Below the pieces are notes generated by a model that saw nothing but the letters and a program-made list of their open reading frames with translations, was not told the DNA's origin and made no database searches. Positions 10,374 through 53,922 of a stretch of 64,000 nt of DNA are shown here, piece by piece. A program made the translations under genes and the position numbers. The stretch covers positions 265,322-329,321 of the IMG/VR virus record IMGVR_UViG_3300021137_000001. The stretch is one strand, 5' to 3'. Within the stretch, counting starts at the first letter, position 1. Each line of letters begins with the position of its first letter.

Positions 10374-11327
10374 TTATGCAACTACCGGAGTGCCCCATTG
10401 AGATACCAAATATGTTGTTTCTGGGTAAACAATATCAACTCGATGATTAAGTGTTACACTTAACACTGCGTTAAGAGCATGAGTTGGTGCGTTTAAATAT
10501 AAGTTAAAAGAAACTACTGCACCTTTATCACCATGCGCCGATACATTTTGCGCACTTGATAGCATTTGAATTTGTGCGTAATCCGTAGTATATGCGGCAG
10601 TTGTACTTGTAACTTGTATAAGAGACACTGCGCCCGTTGTAAGTCCTTGATACCCAATTGTAGTCGAATTAGTATTAAGCGTACCCCCTGTGCCAGTACG
10701 TCCGCCATTTGATGCGTTACGGAATGCGGTCATACCACCGACATTAGTTACTAGTAATGTAGATACATCGACGCTACGTGCAGTAGCATTATTAGTCGAT
10801 GATATTATAACAAGATTCAATTGCCCGCCTGCATTAAAAAAGTAACGTGCAGCATCACCACTGGCAAATGTTACTGTTCTAGTGGCAAATACTGCGGCAT
10901 ACGCCACACCTGTTGCTGCCGAAATTACTGGGGAAAATGTAGCACCAGTAGTAGTTGCGCCTTGTGCAGTAAATGTTGAACTGTTGGTGTTAATTGTTGT
11001 AACTGCGGTATTTAATGCGGCGCTATATGTAGCGGTTGCGCCAGATGTAAGGGTTGGTACGGAGATAGCAGCGGCAGCCCCACTCTGATGTTGTACACAT
11101 ACATTAAGTGCTGTTAATAATCCGCTCCATTGTGTTGCTGTTACAATGCCTGCAGCCGATATAGTATTGAGATTAGTAACTACTTGCCCATAGCCAACTG
11201 CTCCGGAACCAACACCGAGTACGTAGGCAATATTAACTGGCGAGGTAGTATAAGTGCCCTGTGTACCACCCCATGCTAATGCATTAAAATCGGCTGCTTG
11301 AATTGTTCCAGTTGATGCGTATGACAT
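10374..11327 (-). CDS. Virion structural protein (Thr/Ala/Ser/Gly-rich, fibre/baseplate-associated), paralog A
   Basis: Very low charge, beta-rich composition, ARYFFNAGG motif, at the end of the tail module; clear paralog of 11450..12406. Confidence 0.7.
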   Translation of the reverse strand: MSYASTGTIQAADFNALAWGGTQGTYTTSPVNIAYVLGVGSGAVGYGQVVTNLNTISAAGIVTATQWSGLLTALNVCVQHQSGAAAAISVPTLTSGATATYSAALNTAVTTINTNSSTFTAQGATTTGATFSPVISAATGVAYAAVFATRTVTFASGDAARYFFNAGGQLNLVIISSTNNATARSVDVSTLLVTNVGGMTAFRNASNGGRTGTGGTLNTNSTTIGYQGLTTGAVSLIQVTSTTAAYTTDYAQIQMLSSAQNVSAHGDKGAVVSFNLYLNAPTHALNAVLSVTLNHRVDIVYPETTYLVSQWGTPVVA

Positions 11328-11384
11328 TTTCTATTAATTCCTTTACTGCAATATAATAATTACTTATCTTCAATGCATTGCATT

Positions 11385-11454
11385 CATAAAAATAGGTAAG
11401 TGTTTATTCTTACCTATAGTGTACTACATTTATATTAGTATGTCAACTATTATG
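11385..11454. repeat. 70-bp direct repeat, copy 2
   Basis: 68/70 identical to 10309..10378; contains hairpin plus T-tract 11388-11417 and TTGACA-17-TACACT at 11446-11418 (minus). Confidence 0.95.
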
Positions 11455-12406
11455 TAATTGACACTGTACCCCATGAGTTAGTTGTTAAGTAGGTTGATTC
11501 TGGATAAACAACATCAATCTGGAAGTTTAACGTAGCATTAATTGTGTCGTCCCATGCATGATCGGCAACTACATAGCCCAATCTAAAAGCAACACCATAT
11601 CCAGCTGCACCGTTAGTAGTGTCGGGATTGAAGCCATAAACTTGTAAATATGAATAATTGGCAGTATATGCCGCAGTAGTGTCAGTTACTTGTACTAGTG
11701 TATTTGCCACGCCTTGTACATTATTTCTATATCCATATGCTGTATTATTTGTATTCTGTGTAAGGCCAGTACCGCTGCGCCCAGCATTTGTTGTTTGACG
11801 AAATTGTGTTATTCCGCCGACTGCATTAATTACACGTACAAAACTTTGGCTTGACAAAGATCCATTAAGATCAGTTGCAGAAACGCGAACATTTAAATAG
11901 CCGCCTGCATTAAAGAAGTAACGTGCAGCTTGTGCACCTGATGAAAAAGTCGCAAAGTGATCAGTATATGAGTTTACCCCTGTTGTACTACCGGCACCTA
12001 TGTTTGTAGTTGCAAGCGAACCAGTAGTTGTAGCACCTTGCGCTGTATATAATGCAGAATTTGTGTTAATTGTTGTTACAGCCGTTGCCACTGTACTAAA
12101 GTAAGTAATTTTATTACCAGCAGTAATAGTCGGGCTCACTGTTAATTGTGCGCCTGCGCCACTTTGATGACCCAACGCAGCATTTAATGTTGTTAACAAC
12201 CCGCTCCACTGTACCGCAGTAACAGTACCTGCTGCTGCAACTGTGTTAATGGCAGTAACAGACTGGCCGTAGCCCACTGCGCCAGAACCAACTCCCATAA
12301 CATAAGCAATGTTAGTTGGGCTTGCTGTGTAAGTACCTTGTGTACCACCCCATGCTAAGTTATTATAATCCGTTGCTTGTATTAAGCCAGCTGATGCGTA
12401 TGACAT
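11450..12406 (-). CDS. Virion structural protein, paralog B
   Basis: Shares MSYAS..IQA.D.N.LAWGGTQGTYT.SP.NIAYV.GVGSGAVGYGQ, ARYFFNAGG and VYPE.TYL..WGT with 10374..11327. Confidence 0.7.
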   Translation of the reverse strand: MSYASAGLIQATDYNNLAWGGTQGTYTASPTNIAYVMGVGSGAVGYGQSVTAINTVAAAGTVTAVQWSGLLTTLNAALGHQSGAGAQLTVSPTITAGNKITYFSTVATAVTTINTNSALYTAQGATTTGSLATTNIGAGSTTGVNSYTDHFATFSSGAQAARYFFNAGGYLNVRVSATDLNGSLSSQSFVRVINAVGGITQFRQTTNAGRSGTGLTQNTNNTAYGYRNNVQGVANTLVQVTDTTAAYTANYSYLQVYGFNPDTTNGAAGYGVAFRLGYVVADHAWDDTINATLNFQIDVVYPESTYLTTNSWGTVSIT

Positions 12407-46682: not shown

Positions 46683-46792
46683 AAACACATAACTCACACA
46701 GACACCAAGTCGCTCTCATAGAAACAAATTCCAACTCCGTAATAAAGTAGTAAATGTTTTAACCGCAGGTGGAACAAGTGATAAATAACTGT

Positions 46793-47467
46793 ATGAACTA
46801 TACCGAATTAATCACCGAAGAAATACGTAGTAAATTTAAACCCACTTGGCTTTATATTAAGCAACACAATGATACAGGATTACAGTATTTTGGTAAGACT
46901 ATTGTAGCAGATCCATTTAAATATAAAGGATCAGGCACTAGATGGTTATATCATTTAAACTTACATCATAATAATGTAACCACAGTCTGGTGTAAGTTAT
47001 TCACAGATGTTGATCAATTAGTAGCATACGCTATTGATTTTTCGCTTAATAATAATATTGTAGAATCAGATAAGTGGGCAAATTTAATTATTGAAAATGG
47101 GTTAGATGGAGGAACAACACCATCCGACTGTACTAAAGAAAAAATGAGATTAGCGAATACTGGTAGAAAATATTCAGAAGAAACAAAACAAAAAATTAGA
47201 GCCACAAAGGCAAATTATGTAATAACAGAAGAGACTAGAAAAAAAATGTCACTTGCCCAAAAAGGCAGAATAGTTTCAGAAGAAACAAAACAAAAATTAA
47301 AAAGAACTAATACCGGCAAAAAACACCACATTAGTTCAATCGAAAAGATGAAGGTTAGTAGAAGTGAAGTTGTTTATAAATCGGTTGTTTGCCCGCATTG
47401 TGGTAAAGAAGGCGCAATAAACAATATGCCTAGATATCATTTTGATAAATGTAAGGCTAAGAAATAA
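46793..47467 (+). CDS. Free-standing GIY-YIG homing endonuclease with NUMOD3 repeats and C-terminal Zn motif
   Basis: LYIKQH..TGL.YFGKT..DP..Y.GSG..W; NL..ENGLDGG; SEETK.K repeats; CPHCGKEG...HFDKC. Start at the ATG after TAAATA-N5 (track gives 46769). Confidence 0.85.
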   Translation: MNYTELITEEIRSKFKPTWLYIKQHNDTGLQYFGKTIVADPFKYKGSGTRWLYHLNLHHNNVTTVWCKLFTDVDQLVAYAIDFSLNNNIVESDKWANLIIENGLDGGTTPSDCTKEKMRLANTGRKYSEETKQKIRATKANYVITEETRKKMSLAQKGRIVSEETKQKLKRTNTGKKHHISSIEKMKVSRSEVVYKSVVCPHCGKEGAINNMPRYHFDKCKAKK

Positions 47468-47468
47468 A

Positions 47469-48030
47469 ACAGACACTGATGAGGATTTTATATCCTTGCT
47501 GTATGAGGAGATTTCGGTCGCGTAATGGCCCCGAATGGAACCGTTAGACTAGACTAACGACGCAGCGTCAAACAAACCGTATTGCGCTATAAAAAGCGAA
47601 TAACAATATAAAATTAGGCTTAAAAGCCGAATGAATTGGGCACTGTGAAAAAGATACAACCCATAAGCATACTATAGTTGGCTAACTACGGCTATGGGTG
47701 CTACCGTCGTAAGAAGCAAGAGTAGGGAGTACAGGGCGACCGCTTCCGTAATAATATGTATATTATAATATATAAAAAGCAAGTAAGATAACAAGACTTT
47801 ATATATTATAGTGTATAATTTACACATCTCTTTTAGTTAGTATGATAGAAGAACTCGGATGAAGTTTTCTGTTATGCTTTGCCTTTAGTGGGTGAAGTAT
47901 GACTGTAATCTGGATGAAGCAGTATTAAAGTCAAAAGCAATACAGTAAGTATCAAAGTAATTTAGAATATATAAATTAGAAGAAAAAGCATTAAGCGAAG
48001 CGTAAATGCGAATGTCGTAAGACATTCTTT
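47469..48030 (+). ncRNA. Candidate large structured non-coding RNA (family unassigned)
   Basis: ~620 bp with no tracked ORF in a gene-dense genome; succession of stems, several with G-U pairs on the plus strand (see findings). Confidence 0.5.
48010..48030. terminator. Hairpin at the convergence point, likely terminator
   Basis: GAATGTC-GTAA-GACATTC-TTT (7-bp perfect stem, GNRA loop) between convergent transcription units. Confidence 0.5.
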
Positions 48031-48089: not shown

Positions 48090-48836
48090 TTATCTATTTG
48101 CATATTTGGCTATACGTGCTTCTGATATTGCTTTTTTATGTGCTTCTGACTTTGGTTTACGCATCTTTTGTTTTGTTTCTTCACTTTTTGGCGGTAACTT
48201 TTTTCCTTTATTAATCGCAGAAAGTTTAGCTTTAGTTTCATCGGACATAACTCTACCTTTACCTGCTGCAGATATTTTTGCTGATATTATATTCTTTTCT
48301 TCTTGAGAATATTTTTTTGCTACTCTTCCTTTTTGAGCAATACTCATACGTTCTTTCTGTTCCGCTGTTCTTTTTTTACCTATACAAGATGCACTACGTT
48401 TATCTATAGTTTCTTGCGAATGTACTCTTCCTTTTCCTGCTGCAGATATTTTAGCTTTCTGTTCCGCCGACATAGTCCGACCTGTAAGTCGAGCAGAATG
48501 TATTTTACTAAATTCTTCTTTAAGATTAGCAAATACACGACTGGTAATTTTAGTAATATATCGTTCTTGTTGATGAGTGCGTGATACCCGTCGCATACCA
48601 TTTAATGCATATATCATTTTTTCACGATTGCTACCTGTTGTTATTTTAATTAACAACCAATGACATATAAAATGCTCTCGCCCTGACAAATGAACAAGAT
48701 TATTCTTGCTATCTTGTCCTCCGATTGATTTCGGTATGATATGATGCTTTTCACTGTAAGAAAGCGGTGTTGATCTCAATTGCGCATTACTGACAATTGC
48801 ATCATACCACCGCTTGTATTTGTTTTTAATAAACAT
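48090..48836 (-). CDS. Free-standing HNH homing endonuclease with NUMOD3 repeats
   Basis: YSEKHHIIPKSIGG.D...NLV.L..REHFICHWLL; repeated K.KISAA.KGR; TAAATA at 48860-48855. Confidence 0.88.
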   Translation of the reverse strand: MFIKNKYKRWYDAIVSNAQLRSTPLSYSEKHHIIPKSIGGQDSKNNLVHLSGREHFICHWLLIKITTGSNREKMIYALNGMRRVSRTHQQERYITKITSRVFANLKEEFSKIHSARLTGRTMSAEQKAKISAAGKGRVHSQETIDKRSASCIGKKRTAEQKERMSIAQKGRVAKKYSQEEKNIISAKISAAGKGRVMSDETKAKLSAINKGKKLPPKSEETKQKMRKPKSEAHKKAISEARIAKYANR

Positions 48837-48894: not shown

Positions 48895-49113
48895 CTAAAA
48901 AAAAGGCAGCCCCGACTTCTGGGTCGTTTCCATATTCTCTTTAATTAACTTATTAATTATATTTCTATCAATAATACCTAGCATCATAGCTTCACTATAC
49001 GATACTGATCCTCGCATATACCAACAAATTCTTAATGCTTCGTCCTTAAAGGCTTTTGCTTCTTTTTCCATTGATTCTAACTCAGATTCTATTTCTTCGT
49101 TAGATTGACTCAA
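48895..49113 (-). CDS. gp51-like baseplate/tail assembly chaperone segment, probably expressed as a -1 frameshift extension of 49119..49964
   Basis: ICWYMRG.VSY.EAM.L...DR.II..LI.EN pattern; no ATG or well-spaced RBS; in the -1 frame of the upstream slippery site. Confidence 0.7.
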   Translation of the reverse strand: MSQSNEEIESELESMEKEAKAFKDEALRICWYMRGSVSYSEAMMLGIIDRNIINKLIKENMETTQKSGLPFF

Positions 49114-49118
49114 AAGCC

Positions 49119-49964
49119 TTATGCGAAAAAACTTGTTTGATTGAACTCCAATTTAACTTTATATGATTTCTCACATTCATTGCATACTAGTTCTACTGGC
49201 TCTAATGCGTTGGCACCAACAGTTTCTTCGATTAGTAACTTTACACCATCATATGTTTTTCTATCTGTGTTGACTAAAAAGTCTTGTATTAACACAGCTT
49301 CAGCTACTTTAATTCCATCTTCAGTTGTAATAGATTCTATACATGATACTAGTGTACCTATGTTAAGTTCAGTCAACTTATCAAATGCTTCTTGGAATAG
49401 TTTTTGTTTTTCCGTTTCCTCTAAGTCACTGCTAGAAATAACACTAACTAATTTTTGCTGTTCGAATGATATTAATCCTACGCGATTTAAATCATTGTAC
49501 GTTTGTGGTTTTAATTTAAACAGTAAACCATTTAAATGAGTTGATTCTGTGTATTTTCTTAACGGTGCTACGTTGTCTAATACATGGCGTAAATCGACTG
49601 TGTGTTCGTTTTCTCCTTGACAATGTGGGCAAGTACTGGTCATATCCATGCCACTACCGTAACTTGCTAGCCTAATTGCAATTAAGATAGAATCTAAATC
49701 AATTAATGGAATAATCCACGGATCTTTAATATTAGGACAACAGCTGGCAATCATATCACGCATGCCTGCACCGTTCATTAGTGCATCTGGTGTTTTTAAT
49801 AAAATTTCGTCTTTAATTGTCATTGGGTAAATTGGAATTTCACCAGTTAGTGATATGTCTAATGAACCTTGCGGGTAAAACTTACCACCGCTGGGTAGTT
49901 TTAAATAAATTGAAGGCTGTCTGAAATGACTTGCTAGCGGATTATTTGCTATTGAATTGCTCAT
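49119..49964 (-). CDS. gp26: Baseplate hub assembly protein / tail assembly chaperone, gp26-like
   Basis: NPL..HFRQP.IY.KLPSGG.FY...PMT.KDEI.LKTPDAL.NG...DLD.ILIAIR.ASYG...CPHC...C.EC. Start at MSNSIA after GGAG (track gives 50084). Confidence 0.8.
   Translation of the reverse strand: MSNSIANNPLASHFRQPSIYLKLPSGGKFYPQGSLDISLTGEIPIYPMTIKDEILLKTPDALMNGAGMRDMIASCCPNIKDPWIIPLIDLDSILIAIRLASYGSGMDMTSTCPHCQGENEHTVDLRHVLDNVAPLRKYTESTHLNGLLFKLKPQTYNDLNRVGLISFEQQKLVSVISSSDLEETEKQKLFQEAFDKLTELNIGTLVSCIESITTEDGIKVAEAVLIQDFLVNTDRKTYDGVKLLIEETVGANALEPVELVCNECEKSYKVKLEFNQTSFFA
49125..49131 (-). other. Predicted programmed -1 ribosomal frameshift site (T TTT TTC)
   Basis: AGT TTT TTC GCA TAA; the -1 frame reads TTT CGC ATA AGG CTT TTG AGT CAA, continuous with ORF 48895..49113. 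Confidence 0.7.
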
Positions 49965-50024
49965 AGGGGTTTTAAACTCCATAAATATACTATGTAATAC
50001 CATATATTTATTTGGATAAAACCC

Positions 50025-52178
50025 ATGGCAATTAAAATAGACATTCCTGGCTTCGGCGAAGTTACTGTAGAAGGAGCTGCACAAGAGGATACAATGCAGG
50101 CCATCCTTGCAGCTGTTAATAAAACAGACAAAAGCAAAGCCGCCGACGAAAAGAAAAATAAAAAAGCCACAGACGATGCCGCTAAATCCGCAGCGACTAT
50201 GGCACTAGGATTAGATGACGCTGTAGAAGCTGCCAAAAAAGCAACAAAAGAAGAAAAATTAAGAACTGACAAACGTGAGAAAGAAATAAAACACGCTACT
50301 AAAGAAGCGATAGCGCAAGTTGGCAACTTTGGAGTTGCTCTTGCATCAACTGCAGCCAGTGTTGCAACTAGCATGATTAAAAACATTGATGCAAATGCAG
50401 AAAATCCAATTGCTTTAGGTGCCGGGCTTATTAATACTGGCCTTGACATGGTCGGAGCTGCACTTAAAATTGGGGTCGATGTTATTTCATCATTTACTGG
50501 CGCATTAGCTGGTGCAATACCTGTTGTTGGCGGTGGAGCACAACGACTCAATGACGGACTTGCAAATGTAGCAAAAGAAGTAATTGACTTTGGTGTGCAA
50601 GTTGCTAAAGCTGCAAATGACTTTATGGCCGCAGAGTTTGAAAAAACTGCTGCATCGATGAAAGCAATGACAGCATCAGGCGCAAGTTTTGCTGGCGGCA
50701 TGACAGAATTACGGCAAATTGCAAATGACAGTGGAGTTGGGTTGACTGTATTTACTAAAGTAGTACAAAATAGTCAAAATTATCTACACACATTTGGTAT
50801 AACCGCAACAGAATCAACAGCGTTAGTGTCATTGGGAATGAAAACATTAGCAAATACCACACGAACTGTGAATGGTGTGCAAATGAAAGCACGTGATCAA
50901 CTATTAAATCTAGGCTATAGCTATGAAGAACAAGGTGAGATCATGTCACAGTACATGGTATCACAAAAATTAGCAGGGAAAAATCTTGCTGATATGACGC
51001 CAAAAGCATTAACTGATGGTGTATTAGAATATGCAAAAAACTTAAAGGTTATTAGTGATATAACTGGTCAAGATGCTAAGAAGTTAATGGAAAAAGCGCA
51101 AGCAGAAACCATGCGCGGAGCAATGCTTGGTAAGTTAGATGAAAAACAATCTAAGGCATACGCCGAGTCATATGCTGTATTATCAAAAGCAGGTCCTGAA
51201 ATGGGTGCTAAAATGCAAATTGCATTAACACAAATAATGTCAGGTAATGCTATTACAGATCCTATTATTGCTGGTAATAGAACTGTAATGGATATGTTAC
51301 ATAAGACTGCAAGTGAAGCTATGGAAGGTCAAACTGGCATGGCAGCTAAAACTTTTGATAATATGCAAGAGGCAGGCGCAAATATTAAAAAATTCGGTGA
51401 ACGAGCAACCGATACTGCTGCATTAGAAGGAGTAATGGATCCTACAGTTAAAGGATTTGCGGAATTAAATAATTCATTAATAATGCTAACACCTGCTATG
51501 GCAGCATCAGGTACAGCCTCAGAAATCGCAGCCAAAGCACAATCTGAAACTACAGACAAAGTATCACAAGATTTTGCTAAAGCATCAAACTCTGCAGCTC
51601 ATTTTGGGGTAGCATTAGAAACAATTGCTACAGATAATATGGCTGCTTATGCTGATGTATTAGTAAAAGCAATTGGAGTAACACAAACTGCAATCCAAGA
51701 TGGTATTGCAGCATCGTTAGATTTTAAAAAGTGGGCTGCAGCTAAAGGTAAAGAACTAGCAGAAACGGGTCCAGAAAAAGAAATGAGTACTGGGCGTAAA
51801 ATATTAGATTATGGAGCAACAGCAATTGGTGCAACTGCTGGTGCATTAATAGGTGGAGGTACAACTGCCGGTCTCGGTACTGTTGTTGGCGGAGTTGCTG
51901 GTGGTAGTTTAGGGCATGAAGCAGGCTCGTGGGCTGCTGATAAATTAGGATTTGCTAAAGGAGGTATTGCATCAGGATCAATTGGCGGCTATCAAGAGTT
52001 ACTGCACGGTACAGAAGCAGTTGTACCATTACCAGACGGTAAATCAATACCAGTTAGCTTAGATAGTAGTTCATTAAATGCATCGATACAACAACAAACT
52101 ATGATTTTAAATGGAATACTTGCGGCAATGAATAAAAATAATCATCTATCGTCTGGAATATTACAGAACAGTTACTAA
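50025..52178 (+). CDS. Tape-measure-like protein (gp29-equivalent)
   Basis: Ala-rich helical protein with glycine-zipper/hydrophobic segments, C-terminal FAKGGI..G...LHGTEAVVPLPDG; adjacent to the chaperone pair. Confidence 0.7.
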   Translation: MAIKIDIPGFGEVTVEGAAQEDTMQAILAAVNKTDKSKAADEKKNKKATDDAAKSAATMALGLDDAVEAAKKATKEEKLRTDKREKEIKHATKEAIAQVGNFGVALASTAASVATSMIKNIDANAENPIALGAGLINTGLDMVGAALKIGVDVISSFTGALAGAIPVVGGGAQRLNDGLANVAKEVIDFGVQVAKAANDFMAAEFEKTAASMKAMTASGASFAGGMTELRQIANDSGVGLTVFTKVVQNSQNYLHTFGITATESTALVSLGMKTLANTTRTVNGVQMKARDQLLNLGYSYEEQGEIMSQYMVSQKLAGKNLADMTPKALTDGVLEYAKNLKVISDITGQDAKKLMEKAQAETMRGAMLGKLDEKQSKAYAESYAVLSKAGPEMGAKMQIALTQIMSGNAITDPIIAGNRTVMDMLHKTASEAMEGQTGMAAKTFDNMQEAGANIKKFGERATDTAALEGVMDPTVKGFAELNNSLIMLTPAMAASGTASEIAAKAQSETTDKVSQDFAKASNSAAHFGVALETIATDNMAAYADVLVKAIGVTQTAIQDGIAASLDFKKWAAAKGKELAETGPEKEMSTGRKILDYGATAIGATAGALIGGGTTAGLGTVVGGVAGGSLGHEAGSWAADKLGFAKGGIASGSIGGYQELLHGTEAVVPLPDGKSIPVSLDSSSLNASIQQQTMILNGILAAMNKNNHLSSGILQNSY

Positions 52179-52212: not shown

Positions 52213-53922
52213 ATGGCTGGATGGAAAAAACATTTTAGAACTGCAAACACTAGTGGACAAATGAGTCCGATTGGCAACAATTCATCTGCTGATCCAAGCT
52301 ATCGTAATTTTGCCAGTCAACTACCTGAAGTATATATCGGGCACCCAAATCGTACTGAACGTTATAATCAGTATGAGCAAATGGATATGGATAGTGAAGT
52401 CAATGCTGCACTTGATATTATTGCAGAGTTTTGTTCACAACCTAACACAGAAAATGGCACAGGCTTTGATTTATACTTTAAAGAAAAGCCAACAGACAAC
52501 GAAATCAAACTACTTAAAGATCAACTGCTACAGTGGGTTAATCTAAATCAATTAAACAAACGCTTATTTAAACTTGTACGTAATACATTAAAGTATGGCG
52601 ATCAAGTATTCTTACGTGATCCGGAAACATTTAAGTTATACTGGACAGAAATGGGCAGTGTAATCAAAGTTATTGTTAATGAAGCAGAAGGCAAAGAGCC
52701 AGAGCAATATGTAATTAAAAATCTTAATCTTAACTTTCAAAACTTAACTGCTACTGCATTAAGTTCAAGCGATACATATACAAATCACCCGCAACAAGGT
52801 GGTAGTGGTGGACAAGGTTCTTATGTACAACCTAATGTTCCGTACAGTGGCGGTTCACGCTTTAGTCATGCGCAAAACGAAGCAGTGCTAAATGCAGAAC
52901 ACGTTGTACATATTAGTTTAACAGAGGGCTTGGATGTAAACTGGCCGTTTGGTACTAGTATTCTTGAAAGTATATTTAAAATCTTTAAACAAAAAGAATT
53001 GTTAGAAGATGCTATTATTATCTACCGCGTACAACGTGCGCCAGAAAGACGTGTATTTAAAATTGATGTTGGTAATATGCCAACCCACATGGCTATGGCG
53101 TTTGTGGACAGAATTAAAAATGAAGTACATCAACGTCGCATACCAACACAAACTGGTGGCGGTGCAAATATGATGGATGCAACATACAATCCACTATCAA
53201 CAAATGAAGACTTTTTCTTCCCAGTTGGCGCAGAAGGGCGCGGTTCAACAGTCGAAGCATTGCCGGGTGGTAGCAACTTAGGTGAGATTACAGACTTACG
53301 TTTCTTTACTAATAAAATGTTCCGTGGCTTACGTATTCCTAGTAGTTACTTGCCGACTGGTGCAGATGATAGTTCATCTACATTTAATGACGGACGTGGT
53401 ACTACGGCGTTAATTCAAGAATGGCGCTTTAATCAATACTGTATGCGTTTACAAACTATGATAGTTGAAAAACTAGATAGTGAATTTAAAATGTTTATGC
53501 GCTGGAGAGGTATTAATATTGACGGACAGTTATTTGAATTAAGACTAAACGAACCACAAAACTTTGCAAAATATCGTCAAGCAGAAGTTGATGCAGCACG
53601 TATTACTGCATTTACACAACTAGAAGCAGTTCCTTACTTGAGCAAACGCTTTTTACTTACTAGATACTTAGATTTAAGTGAAGAAGAAATGCAACAAAAT
53701 GACGAGATGTGGGCAGAAGAACACGAAGATAGTGCTGCACCAGTTGATACTGATGCTGGCTTACGTGCTGTTGGAGTAACACCAGCAAGTATCGAAGGCG
53801 ATATGAGTAATTTAGAGATGCCTGAAATACCAGCAGAAGGTGAACCAGCACCAGAAGCTGGTGGATTACCTCCACCGACGGGTGTACCGCCTGCATCAGC
53901 TCCTCCACCAGCCGGAATGTAA
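52213..53922 (+). CDS. gp20: Portal protein, T4 gp20-like
   Basis: MDMDSEVNAALDII; KQKELLEDAIIIYRVQRAPERRVFKIDVGNMP; EDFFFP...GS.VE.LPGG.NLGEI.D..FF..K..RGLRIP.S. Confidence 0.95.
   Translation: MAGWKKHFRTANTSGQMSPIGNNSSADPSYRNFASQLPEVYIGHPNRTERYNQYEQMDMDSEVNAALDIIAEFCSQPNTENGTGFDLYFKEKPTDNEIKLLKDQLLQWVNLNQLNKRLFKLVRNTLKYGDQVFLRDPETFKLYWTEMGSVIKVIVNEAEGKEPEQYVIKNLNLNFQNLTATALSSSDTYTNHPQQGGSGGQGSYVQPNVPYSGGSRFSHAQNEAVLNAEHVVHISLTEGLDVNWPFGTSILESIFKIFKQKELLEDAIIIYRVQRAPERRVFKIDVGNMPTHMAMAFVDRIKNEVHQRRIPTQTGGGANMMDATYNPLSTNEDFFFPVGAEGRGSTVEALPGGSNLGEITDLRFFTNKMFRGLRIPSSYLPTGADDSSSTFNDGRGTTALIQEWRFNQYCMRLQTMIVEKLDSEFKMFMRWRGINIDGQLFELRLNEPQNFAKYRQAEVDAARITAFTQLEAVPYLSKRFLLTRYLDLSEEEMQQNDEMWAEEHEDSAAPVDTDAGLRAVGVTPASIEGDMSNLEMPEIPAEGEPAPEAGGLPPPTGVPPASAPPPAGM

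What the first reader, a model, noticed from the sequence alone, without database searches (positions are those of the whole stretch)
48895..49964. gp26/gp51-like genes joined by a lambda G/GT-style -1 frameshift
Seen: the gp26-like ORF ends AGT TTT TTC GCA TAA (slippery T TTT TTC). The -1 frame continues FRIRLLSQSNEEIE... through the whole 72-codon downstream ORF, which has no ATG start or well-spaced RBS. Predicted products are 281 aa and ~356 aa. Known: tail assembly chaperones of long-tailed phages are made as G and GT by such frameshifts next to the tape-measure gene, whereas T4 genes 26 and 51 are annotated as separate genes. Inference: this links T4-type gp26/gp51 to the G/GT chaperone system; here the pair is divergent from the tape-measure-like gene.
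Basis: partly seen in the sequence, partly recalled or inferred. Interest (0 to 1): 0.7.

Follow-up and report, generated by a model that had tools for sequence, protein, structure and literature searches.

The report
Frameshifted tail chaperone gene, T4 type
A giant freshwater phage very probably makes a short and a long version of its T4-type tail-assembly chaperone from one gene by a conserved -1 slip at TTTTTTC, the same pair that phage T4 encodes as genes 26 and 51; the case is well supported, but the principle was published in 2022.

Summary
On the minus strand a 281-codon gp26-like gene (Pfam PF12322) ends AGT TTT TTC GCA TAA. The -1 frame stays open for 76 more codons, so the products would be 281 and 356 aa.

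It is not chance. All 37 related loci examined (23 distinct at this site) carry the identical in-phase heptamer T TTT TTC. In all of them a 0-frame stop follows 1-11 codons later, and a 70-77-codon -1 extension evolves as protein. No start codon is conserved, and one relative has none at all.

A stem starting 4 nt after the heptamer shows compensatory changes in the window's clade. Other phages encode the same extension in frame, as the C-terminus of a second, longer PF12322 gene placed right after a short one.

T4 gp26 and gp51 are both PF12322 proteins, and the gp51 tail is homologous to the extension. So short product = gp26 equivalent and shifted product = gp51 equivalent.

Cyanophage S-PM2, KVP40 and HTVC008M have the same signal, but GenBank lists the tail ORF as a separate tiny "gp51".

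However, Vladimirov, Gautam and Davidson (Virology 2022) had already identified these genes as the tail assembly chaperones of T4-like phages. This is therefore a new member of a known kind. Ribosomal versus transcriptional slippage is not settled.

The parts
49119..49964 (-). Short-form chaperone gene (gp26-like, TAC-N): 281 codons plus the TAA stop. It has two CxxC pairs (C112/C115 and C261/C264) and ends ...FNQTSFFA*.
   Evidence: Translation. Pfam PF12322 T4_baseplate, E 9.7e-15, above the curated cut-off, and phrog_150 baseplate hub. AF2 model pLDDT 85. It is the only PF12322 gene in the 329-kb genome.
49125..49131 (-). Slippery heptamer T TTT TTC, phased X XXY YYZ in the gp26-like frame. 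This is the proposed -1 shift site.
   Evidence: Sequence. It is identical in 37 of 37 loci, 23 of them distinct. The preceding codon is always NNT (AAT, AGT, CAT or CGT), and the Phe-Phe pair is always TTT TTC, although Phe codons elsewhere in these genes are 155 TTT to 79 TTC. It is intact in four DNA runs.
48895..49125 (-). Extension in the -1 frame (TAC-C part, gp51-tail equivalent): 76 codons RIRLLSQSNEEIE...QKSGLPFF plus a TAG stop. It is read only after the shift.
   Evidence: Translation. It is conserved as protein (alignment A2). Substitutions fall 32/19/49% on codon positions 1/2/3 of this frame, and this frame has no stops against 4-11 in the other frames. The profile finds in-frame C-terminal copies in 319-351-aa PF12322 proteins. 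hhalign against the gp51 tail gives E 3e-5, with 0 of 300 column shuffles as good.
49111..49120 (-). 5' arm (AAGGCUUUUG) of a long-range stem. It starts 4 nt after the heptamer.
   Evidence: MFE -22.3 kcal/mol, z -2.6. In 13 aligned relatives 95% of cells are paired, 4 pairs show compensatory changes, and 0 of 500 shuffles reach the observed score.
49049..49058 (-). 3' arm (CAAAAGCCUU) of the same stem. The stem closes a region of about 52 nt that has an inner hairpin.
50025..52178 (+). Divergently transcribed 717-aa tape-measure-like gene, the presumed client of the chaperone. The T4-type portal gene follows at 52213-53922.
   Evidence: Weak phrog_167 tape measure hit, E 0.0023. The RaK2 homologue is annotated as similar to a tape measure protein. 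Some homologues carry SLT or glycine-zipper domains. The synteny portal / TMP-like / divergent PF12322 gene is conserved in Ettore, BF, RaK2, L044 and L047.

Best explanation
The gp26-like gene is the tail (hub) assembly chaperone gene of a T4-related jumbo phage, and it is decoded in two ways.
- Most ribosomes terminate at TAA, two codons after T TTT TTC, and make the 281-aa short form. This is the equivalent of T4 gp26.
- A minority slip back one base on U UUU UUC, with both tRNA-Phe re-pairing on UUU UUU. The slip is helped by an RNA stem that begins 4 nt downstream. These ribosomes continue for 76 codons and make a 356-aa long form, whose extra three-helix tail is the equivalent of the C-terminal tail of T4 gp51.

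By analogy with lambda gpG/gpGT and with T4 genetics, the short form is expected to coat the tape-measure-like protein encoded next door. The rarer long form would use its tail to recruit the next tail component. Neither form is expected to stay in the virion.

Shown here: the signals, their conservation, the coding nature of the extension, its natural in-frame fusion to the same domain in other phages, and its homology to the gp51 tail.

Inferred: that the slip is ribosomal, its efficiency, and the chaperone mechanism.
For: - Heptamer and stop. The heptamer is identical and in phase in 37 of 37 loci (23 distinct) down to 26% protein identity. A 0-frame stop follows 1-11 codons later, and the -1 frame is open only 2-14 codons upstream.
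- Codon choice. The choice at the site is not explained by the protein. The preceding wobble base is always T, and the pair is always TTT TTC against 66% TTT usage elsewhere.
- No conserved start. Phage Ettore has no ATG, GTG or TTG anywhere in its 73-codon extension ORF. In several clades the first start lies at extension residue 31-37, inside the conserved WYMRGG motif. Gene callers start these ORFs at many different positions.
- Purifying selection acts in the -1 frame.
- Natural fusions. About 20 of the top 150 profile hits are 319-351-aa proteins with the extension in frame after a PF12322 domain. All 5 of the 5 examined sit directly behind a short PF12322 paralogue.
- Copy number. Genomes with the heptamer have one PF12322 gene. 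T4 and CP220, which encode a separate long form, have two.
- Decay of the heptamer. It is lost where a separate long gene exists: T4 has TTC TTT, and it is lost in 3 of 5 tandem short genes.
- T4 paralogy. gp26 and gp51 both match the whole PF12322 profile, and gp51 has about 48 extra residues. These match the extension profile (E 3e-5; score 27.4 against shuffled 9.7 +/- 2.2).
- RNA structure. The downstream stem shows covariation. Hairpins are also predicted after the site in S-PM2 and KVP40.
- Function in T4. gp26 and gp51 are listed as hub assembly chaperones, and gp51 is absent from the particle (PMC3004832).
Against: - No protein or ribosome data exist for this phage.
- The stem is not predicted in the RaK2/BF group, in L001 or in L023. 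The stimulator is therefore not universal.
- A run of six T could also allow RNA polymerase slippage, which would give the same protein.
[quoted passage not shown] I could not read that paper.
- The complex prediction of the short form with the tape-measure-like protein gave no answer.
- The fold has no solved relative, so the chaperone role rests on T4 genetics, synteny and analogy.
Confidence: 0.75

Rival explanations
1. Transcriptional slippage. RNA polymerase occasionally adds one U in the run of six, and the edited mRNA encodes the 356-aa protein in a single frame. The ribosome does not shift.
For: - The site is a homopolymer run (T6; T7 in HTVC008M).
- Only a few percent of long form may be needed, by analogy with lambda.
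- The title of Vladimirov et al. [quoted passage not shown] The PRFect paper, however, explains this as separate short and long genes.
- The stem is absent in some clades.
Against: - The run is only 6 nt in every one of the 23 distinct loci and is never lengthened. From general knowledge, efficient bacterial RNA polymerase slippage usually needs about 8-9 or more.
- The seventh base is C in 23 of 23 loci, although TTT is the commoner Phe codon and would lengthen the run.
- A conserved stem with compensatory changes lies 4-6 nt downstream. This is the position typical of ribosomal -1 stimulators.
Confidence: 0.17
2. Two separate genes. The downstream ORF is translated on its own, from TTG 49113 in the window, as a small gp51-like protein. 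This is how GenBank annotates it in S-PM2, KVP40 and HTVC008M.
For: - Separate small CDSs are annotated in several records.
- A TTG lies at extension codon 5 in the window's clade.
Against: - Ettore has no start codon at all in this ORF. In other clades the first start lies at residues 31-37, inside the most conserved motif.
- Residues 1-5 (RxRLL), upstream of any start, are conserved, with R1 and L4 invariant.
- No properly spaced SD exists.
- Everywhere the sequence is found in frame, it is the C-terminus of a PF12322 domain (for CP220, and T4 gp51).
Confidence: 0.05
3. Artefact or pseudogene. An assembly error in the T run, or a recent frameshift mutation, has broken a single long gene.
For: Homopolymer runs are prone to indel errors.
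Against: - The same arrangement occurs in 37 loci from isolates and metagenomes of many studies.
- Contigs of four independent runs show no indel.
- In-frame long forms have a different junction (a single F, no T run) and always come with a separate short gene.
Confidence: 0.01

Closest known systems
[quoted passage not shown] Known to me only through citing papers PMC10885494 and PMC12846349.
   Same: - Same protein family (PF12322).
- Same short and long isoform pair.
- A poly-T slippery sequence at the end of the short gene.
- Alternative encoding as a short gene plus a longer fused gene.
   Different: - This instance comes from an uncultivated 329-kb freshwater jumbo phage. Its named relatives are the RaK2/121Q/BF group, Wroclawvirus and Atu_ph07, and I could not check whether that paper covered them.
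- Added here: a covarying downstream stem, tandem short+long genes in jumbo-phage contigs, and decay of the heptamer where the long form has its own gene.
- The paper's view on mechanism could not be read.
Phage T4 genes 26 and 51 (hub assembly chaperones)
   Same: - Both are PF12322 proteins, with gp26 matching over residues 1-206 and gp51 over 1-201.
- gp51 carries a tail of about 48 aa that is homologous to the window's -1 extension.
- Both lie next to the hub and tape-measure genes.
   Different: - T4 uses two divergent genes and no recoding. Its FF is encoded TTC TTT, and gene 25 follows gene 26 at once.
- The gp51 tail lacks about 25 residues of the first long helix.
- In the tree, gp26 and gp51 are sisters, which suggests a duplication within the T4 lineage (weak evidence).
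Lambda gpG/gpGT and the conserved tail-chaperone frameshift (Levin 1993; Xu, Hendrix and Duda 2004; as summarised in PMC5009743)
   Same: - A -1 shift near the 3' end of a chaperone gene gives a minor C-terminally extended form.
- The gene neighbours the tape-measure gene.
- The products are expected to be absent from virions.
   Different: - No sequence or fold similarity was detected. This protein is 281 aa with a Cys4 site, whereas gpG-type chaperones are much smaller (about 140 aa in lambda, from general knowledge).
- The gene is divergent from the tape-measure gene rather than directly upstream of it on the same strand.
- The heptamer is U UUU UUC rather than G GGA AAG.
GenBank annotations of cyanophage S-PM2, KVP40 and HTVC008M: a "gp51 baseplate hub assembly catalyst" of 45-57 aa
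   Same: Same small ORF after gene 26, in the -1 frame, behind T TTT TTC or T TTT TTT. The KVP40 note already records its likeness to the C-terminus of T4 gp51.
   Different: These records annotate it as an independent gene. The evidence here says it is the C-terminal part of a shifted gene 26 product.

Membership tests
Pfam PF12322 T4_baseplate (gp26/gp51 family) | HMM match above the curated gathering score | tested here: met
   55.3 bits against a cut-off of 24.5, E 9.7e-15, residues 19-280 on profile positions 4-218 of 219. phrog_150 baseplate hub, E 2.4e-17. BFVD fold matches are to baseplate hub (assembly) proteins (using the long-form model of a homologue).
Pfam PF12322 T4_baseplate (gp26/gp51 family) | Two distant CxxC pairs and a C-terminal F-F motif shared with T4 gp26 | tested here: met
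   C112 and C115 are invariant. C261 and C264 are nearly invariant. F279 and F280 are invariant in alignment A6. T4 gp26 ends ...CPECGK...KEFFELL.
T4-like phage chaperone pair TAC-N / TAC-NC (gp26 / gp51) | A short and a long isoform that share the N-terminal domain | tested here: met
   Met in silico only. The evidence is the heptamer, the early 0-frame stop and the 76-codon -1 extension, the natural in-frame long forms next to short paralogues, and one PF12322 gene per frameshift genome against two in T4 and CP220.
T4-like phage chaperone pair TAC-N / TAC-NC (gp26 / gp51) | The extension is homologous to the C-terminal tail of gp51 | tested here: met
   Tail-to-tail hhalign gives E 3e-5, probability 73% and score 27.4, against column-shuffled 9.7 +/- 2.2 (maximum 21.5, 0 of 300). 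A single-sequence comparison and a full-length profile comparison did not pick up the tail. S-PM2, KVP40 and HTVC008M give intermediate sequences.
T4-like phage chaperone pair TAC-N / TAC-NC (gp26 / gp51) | Both proteins are made, are required for hub and tail assembly, and are absent from virions | not testable with these tools
   Known for T4 gp51 from the literature (PMC3004832). There are no data for this uncultivated phage.
Lambda gpG/gpGT-type tail assembly chaperones | Sequence or fold similarity to known chaperone families or structures | tested here: not met
   There is no Pfam, PHROG or NCBIfam chaperone hit. A profile search against PDB sequences finds nothing. Foldseek against PDB gives no match at E <= 0.001. 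VIA-align wide search gives only helical hairpins, Z <= 8 over about 55 residues.
Lambda gpG/gpGT-type tail assembly chaperones | The gene lies directly upstream of the tape-measure gene on the same strand | tested here: not met
   It is adjacent but divergent: gene start at 49964 (minus strand) against the TMP-like start at 50025 (plus strand). The same holds in RaK2, BF, Ettore, L044 and L047.
Lambda gpG/gpGT-type tail assembly chaperones | Binds the tape measure protein | tested here: inconclusive
   Complex prediction of the 717-aa TMP-like protein with the short form scored 0.00. The tool's verdict was "no answer", which is evidence neither for nor against binding.
Canonical -1 programmed ribosomal frameshift signal | An X XXY YYZ heptamer in the 0-frame phase that allows both tRNAs to re-pair | tested here: met
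   T TTT TTC at 49131-49125, in phase. It is conserved in 37 of 37 loci.
Canonical -1 programmed ribosomal frameshift signal | A stimulatory RNA structure a few nucleotides downstream | tested here: met
   Met for the window's clade. A 10-bp stem starts 4 nt after the site, 95% of cells are paired in 13 sequences, 4 pairs show compensatory change, and 0 of 500 shuffles match. It is not predicted in the RaK2/BF group, L001 or L023.
Canonical -1 programmed ribosomal frameshift signal | A trans-frame protein demonstrated, dependent on the heptamer | not testable with these tools
   This needs mass spectrometry or reporter assays.

The most novel reading that the evidence does not exclude
PF12322 proteins would be a chaperone class structurally unrelated to gpG. 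This class would have arrived independently at the short-plus-long isoform strategy. In most T4-related phages (jumbo phages, cyanophages, pelagiphage, KVP40) the long form would be made by true ribosomal -1 frameshifting on U UUU UUC, driven by lineage-specific downstream stems. The two-gene state of T4, Campylobacter phages and some jumbo phages would then be a repeated, derived replacement of recoding by gene duplication. If the 2022 paper argues for a non-ribosomal route, the covarying stem found here would contradict that argument.
Probability: 0.4. Interest if true: 0.5.

Novelty: new member of a known kind. Interest (0 to 1): 0.4.

Why it matters
- Function in T4. [quoted passage not shown] Here they appear as the long and short forms of one chaperone.
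- Evolution of recoding. The same two-product requirement is met in three ways: by recoding, by tandem duplication, or by dispersed paralogues. This is a clean natural experiment on why G/GT-type frameshifts exist.
- Annotation. The recoded gene is misannotated in essentially every record I inspected. The tail ORF appears as a hypothetical protein, as an unannotated gap, or as a free-standing 45-57-aa "gp51" in S-PM2, KVP40, HTVC008M, RaK2, BF, Atu_ph07 and Ettore. Annotation pipelines could fix this with a simple rule: a PF12322 gene ending in T TTT TTY followed by an open -1 frame.

Tried and rejected
- A locus search with the seven-sequence alignment A1 failed because no stretch was conserved enough. 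Single-protein queries were used instead.
- Megablast of the region against isolated phages found nothing. tblastn of the 76-aa extension found only Atu_ph07 and Phosso.
- hhalign of the extension profile against the single T4 gp51 sequence picked an irrelevant N-terminal stretch. Full-length profile-profile comparison aligned only the N-domain. The tail homology emerged only from tail-only profiles with a shuffle control.
- Pfam PF28602, precomputed on gp51 proteins, is not in the local library. Its name and extent therefore stay unknown.
- Structure searches against PDB gave no meaningful relative.
- The complex prediction gave no answer.
- An upstream SD-like stimulator was considered and rejected. 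It is present at a suitable distance in only 4 of 23 loci.
- No intrinsic terminator was called just after the extension.
- The family tree is too weakly supported to give the direction of evolution. I use it only to say that more than one switch is likely.
- The KVP40, S-PM2 and Vladimirov papers are not held in the library.
- The 246-aa ORF at 49961-50701 (minus strand) overlaps the TMP-like gene and was treated as a shadow ORF.
Full report
**1. The observation**

The feature lies on the minus strand. A 281-codon ORF starts at ATG 49964 and ends ...AAT CAA ACA AGT TTT TTC GCA TAA, with the stop at 49121-49119. The heptamer T TTT TTC occupies 49131-49125 and is phased X XXY YYZ.

After a -1 slip the reading continues CGC ATA AGG CTT TTG... 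= RIRLLSQSNEEIE..., for 76 codons up to TAG 48897-48895. Upstream of the heptamer this frame is open for only nine codons. The mechanical ORF list starts the downstream ORF at TTG 49113 and gives 72 aa.

The neighbours are as follows.
- A 717-aa tape-measure-like gene is transcribed divergently from 50025.
- A T4-type portal gene follows it at 52213.
- An HNH/NUMOD3 homing endonuclease gene lies downstream at 48090-48836 (minus strand).

The window is the last 64 kb of a 329,321-bp IMG/VR virus record with direct terminal repeats. The phage occurs in freshwater metagenomes from 2012 to 2020. Contigs of four independent runs cover the site with no insertion or deletion. A variant strain keeps the heptamer intact.

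**2. What the two reading frames encode**

The 281-aa product is a member of Pfam PF12322 (T4_baseplate; 55 bits against a cut-off of 24.5) and of phrog_150, baseplate hub. The 76-aa extension matches no Pfam, PHROG or NCBIfam model.

The nearest isolated phages are jumbo myoviruses: Pseudomonas Wroclawvirus (Ettore, 30-2; 34.5% identity), Agrobacterium Atu_ph07 (30%), and the RaK2/121Q/GAP32/BF group (26-29%).

**3. Conservation of the signal**

I examined 37 loci. They comprise the window, four isolated phages (L001-L004) and 32 IMG/VR contigs, and 23 of them are distinct around the site. Every one shows four features.
- The identical heptamer T TTT TTC, in the same phase, at the end of the PF12322 ORF.
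- A 0-frame stop 1-11 codons later.
- A -1 frame that is open only 2-14 codons upstream.
- A -1 extension of 70-77 codons.

The nucleotide conservation exceeds what the conserved Phe-Phe dipeptide requires. The preceding codon varies in meaning (Asn, Ser, His or Arg) but always ends in T. The two Phe codons are always TTT TTC, although Phe codons elsewhere in these genes are 155 TTT and 79 TTC.

The extension evolves as a protein in the -1 frame.
- Its consensus is RxRLL..EEI...WYMRGG.SY..AM.L...ER..I..II (alignment A2).
- Pairwise substitutions fall 32%, 19% and 49% on codon positions 1, 2 and 3.
- This frame has no stops, while the other two frames have 4-11.

**4. Independent initiation is very unlikely**

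Phage Ettore has no ATG, GTG or TTG anywhere in its 73-codon extension ORF. In RaK2, L021 and the L025-L033 clade the first possible start lies at extension residue 31-37, inside the most conserved motif. Residues 1-5, which precede any start, are conserved, with R1 and L4 invariant. Among the public gene calls found by the extension profile, the ORFs begin at a dozen different profile positions. This is what is expected if no real start exists.

**5. Natural fusions**

A profile of 18 extensions was searched against 1.84 billion representative proteins. It found 501 hits at E <= 0.001. Most are short stand-alone calls. About 20 of the best 150, however, are proteins of 319-351 aa in which the whole extension profile matches the C-terminal 76 residues.

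Ten of these were scanned, and all carry a PF12322 domain in front of the extension. Their junction reads ...F-R-x-K/Q-L/I-I/L, with a single F and no T run. They are therefore not sequencing errors of the frameshift type.

In five of the five cases examined, the long gene is immediately preceded by a second, short PF12322 gene of 276-300 aa. In a 327-kb ENA contig and a 69-kb Logan contig this pair sits in the same place as in the window, divergent from a TMP-like gene and the portal gene. These phages thus encode from two genes exactly the two products that the frameshift would give from one.

**6. The link to T4**

In T4, genes 26 (208 aa) and 51 (249 aa) are divergent neighbours. Both match the full PF12322 profile, gp26 over residues 1-206 and gp51 over 1-201. 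That leaves gp51 with about 48 extra C-terminal residues.

A family alignment of gp51 (A5) gives the tail consensus FKLLLNPDE.F.FYQINH.LVK..Y...SIM.MIP.ER.IALSLVEKD.KK. Tail-only profile comparison with the extension aligns SY..AM.L...ER..I..II with Y...SIM.MIP.ER.IALSLV. It gives E 3e-5 and score 27.4. Against that, 300 column-shuffled controls scored 9.7 +/- 2.2, with a maximum of 21.5.

T4 gp26 ends ...KEFFELL*, with FF encoded TTC TTT, which is not slippery. Gene 25 follows at once.

The copy numbers fit this picture. The window's genome, Ettore, Atu_ph07, BF, RaK2, S-PM2, HTVC008M, Vi01 and KVP40 each have one PF12322 gene. T4 and Campylobacter phage CP220 have two. In CP220 the second gene carries the tail (...LYPFEREIFISLIN...) in frame.

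Where a separate long gene exists, the heptamer of the short gene tends to decay. It is lost in T4 and in three of five tandem short genes. It is kept in L043 and reads T TTT TTA in L045.

**7. The signal reaches far beyond jumbo phages**

The same arrangement occurs in three well-known phages.
- S-PM2: ...CAG TCT TTT TTC GCA TAA.
- KVP40: ...GAA GAT TTT TTC GTA TAA.
- HTVC008M: ...AGT TTT TTT TAA.

Each of them has a -1 ORF that encodes a gp51-tail-like sequence. GenBank annotates that ORF as a separate 45-57-aa "gp51 baseplate hub assembly catalyst". The KVP40 note says it resembles a 40-residue stretch at the C-terminus of T4 gp51.

None of the seven records I inspected annotates a joined CDS at this site.

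**8. RNA structure**

In the window, AAGGCUUUUG (49120-49111) starts 4 nt after the heptamer. It pairs with CAAAAGCCUU (49058-49049) and encloses an inner hairpin (MFE -22.3 kcal/mol, z -2.6).

In 13 aligned relatives, 95% of the cells of this 10-bp stem are paired. Four pairs show compensatory double changes, for example U-A to C-G in four sequences and G-C to C-G in one. None of 500 shuffles reaches the observed score, and sliding the partner destroys the pairing.

Strong hairpins also follow the site in S-PM2 and KVP40. No comparable stem is predicted in the RaK2/BF group, in Ettore or in L023. An upstream SD-like element is not conserved.

**9. Structure and function**

AlphaFold2 gives confident models.
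- A natural long form reaches pLDDT 90. It has an alpha/beta N-domain with the two CxxC pairs, and the extension forms three helices.
- The window's short form reaches pLDDT 85.

No solved structure resembles them. Among predicted viral structures, the matches are baseplate hub or hub assembly proteins of many myoviruses.

The likeness to lambda G/GT therefore lies in the decoding strategy and the genome neighbourhood, not in demonstrable homology. A complex prediction with the tape-measure-like protein gave no answer.

The chaperone role rests on three things.
- T4 genetics. gp26 and gp51 are hub assembly chaperones, and gp51 is required but absent from the particle (PMC3004832).
- The conserved position next to the tape-measure-like gene.
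- The published assignment described in section 10.

**10. Prior knowledge**

Nine full-text searches for a frameshift in gene 26/51 found no primary report. [quoted passage not shown]
- The PRFect paper summarises it as follows: some T4-like phages carry one short gene and one longer fused gene instead of frameshifting.
- The phage Adele paper cites it for short (TAC-N) and long (TAC-NC) isoforms, and for poly-T slippery sequences in the TAC-N genes of T4-like phages.

The paper itself is not held. The core idea is therefore published.

What I can add is the following.
- This new jumbo-phage member and its clade.
- The quantitative conservation evidence.
- The covarying stem.
- The tandem-gene variants.
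- The decay of the heptamer after duplication.

**11. Verdict**

I estimate a probability of about 0.9 that a recoded long form is made. Given that, the probability is about 0.8 that the event is ribosomal rather than transcriptional.

The finding is a new member of a known kind. It is of moderate interest, mainly as a widespread annotation error and as a clear case of recoding and gene duplication acting as interchangeable solutions.

Noticed in passing
window 48090-48836 (minus strand): A 248-aa HNH plus NUMOD3 homing endonuclease gene (phrog_655, E 4e-42) lies directly downstream of the chaperone gene. Relatives carry other homing endonucleases near the same locus: SegE-like GIY-YIG genes in L044, L046 and L047. 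The locus looks like an insertion hot spot.
   Followed up: partly
L047:1-709 (Logan contig, relative): The T4-type portal gene of this relative is interrupted by an intein. The 963-aa product shows Intein_splicing and HNH_3 hits between two Portal_T4 hits.
   Followed up: no
L055 (Salmonella phage Vi01, record 46764-47522 and downstream): The single PF12322 gene ends ...ACT GAA ATT TTC ATT TAA, with no canonical heptamer. The -1 frame nevertheless encodes a tail-like sequence (YSIFEISESMPW...). The frame is open for only three codons before the stop, so any shift must occur within A ATT TTC ATT. This may be a non-canonical site.
   Followed up: no
L057 and L058 (Campylobacter phage CP220, record 11161-11790 and 2349-2651): This phage has two PF12322 genes about 9 kb apart: a short form of 228 aa, and a form of 244 aa with the gp51-like tail in frame. 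It is a dispersed two-gene solution like that of T4.
   Followed up: partly
window 49961-50701 (minus strand): A 246-aa ATG ORF overlaps the 5' part of the 717-aa tape-measure-like gene on the opposite strand and has no family hit. It is most likely a shadow ORF.
   Followed up: partly
window 50025-52178 (plus strand) and homologues P0273, P0281, P0286: Some homologues of the tape-measure-like protein are 950-1100 aa and carry an SLT lytic transglycosylase domain (PF01464). Others carry glycine-zipper domains. The C-terminal motif LHGTEAVVPLPD..IPV is nearly invariant.
   Followed up: no
L043:1650-1704 and L045:2750-2789: In two tandem short+long loci the short gene still ends with T TTT TTC or T TTT TTA, although a -1 shift there would meet a stop almost at once. 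These may be relics of an ancestral frameshift site.
   Followed up: partly
gp51 family proteins P0151-P0242: The precomputed annotation lists a second Pfam family, PF28602.1, on gp51 proteins. It is absent from the local Pfam copy. It may be a model of the gp51 tail and would be worth testing on the window's extension.
   Followed up: partly
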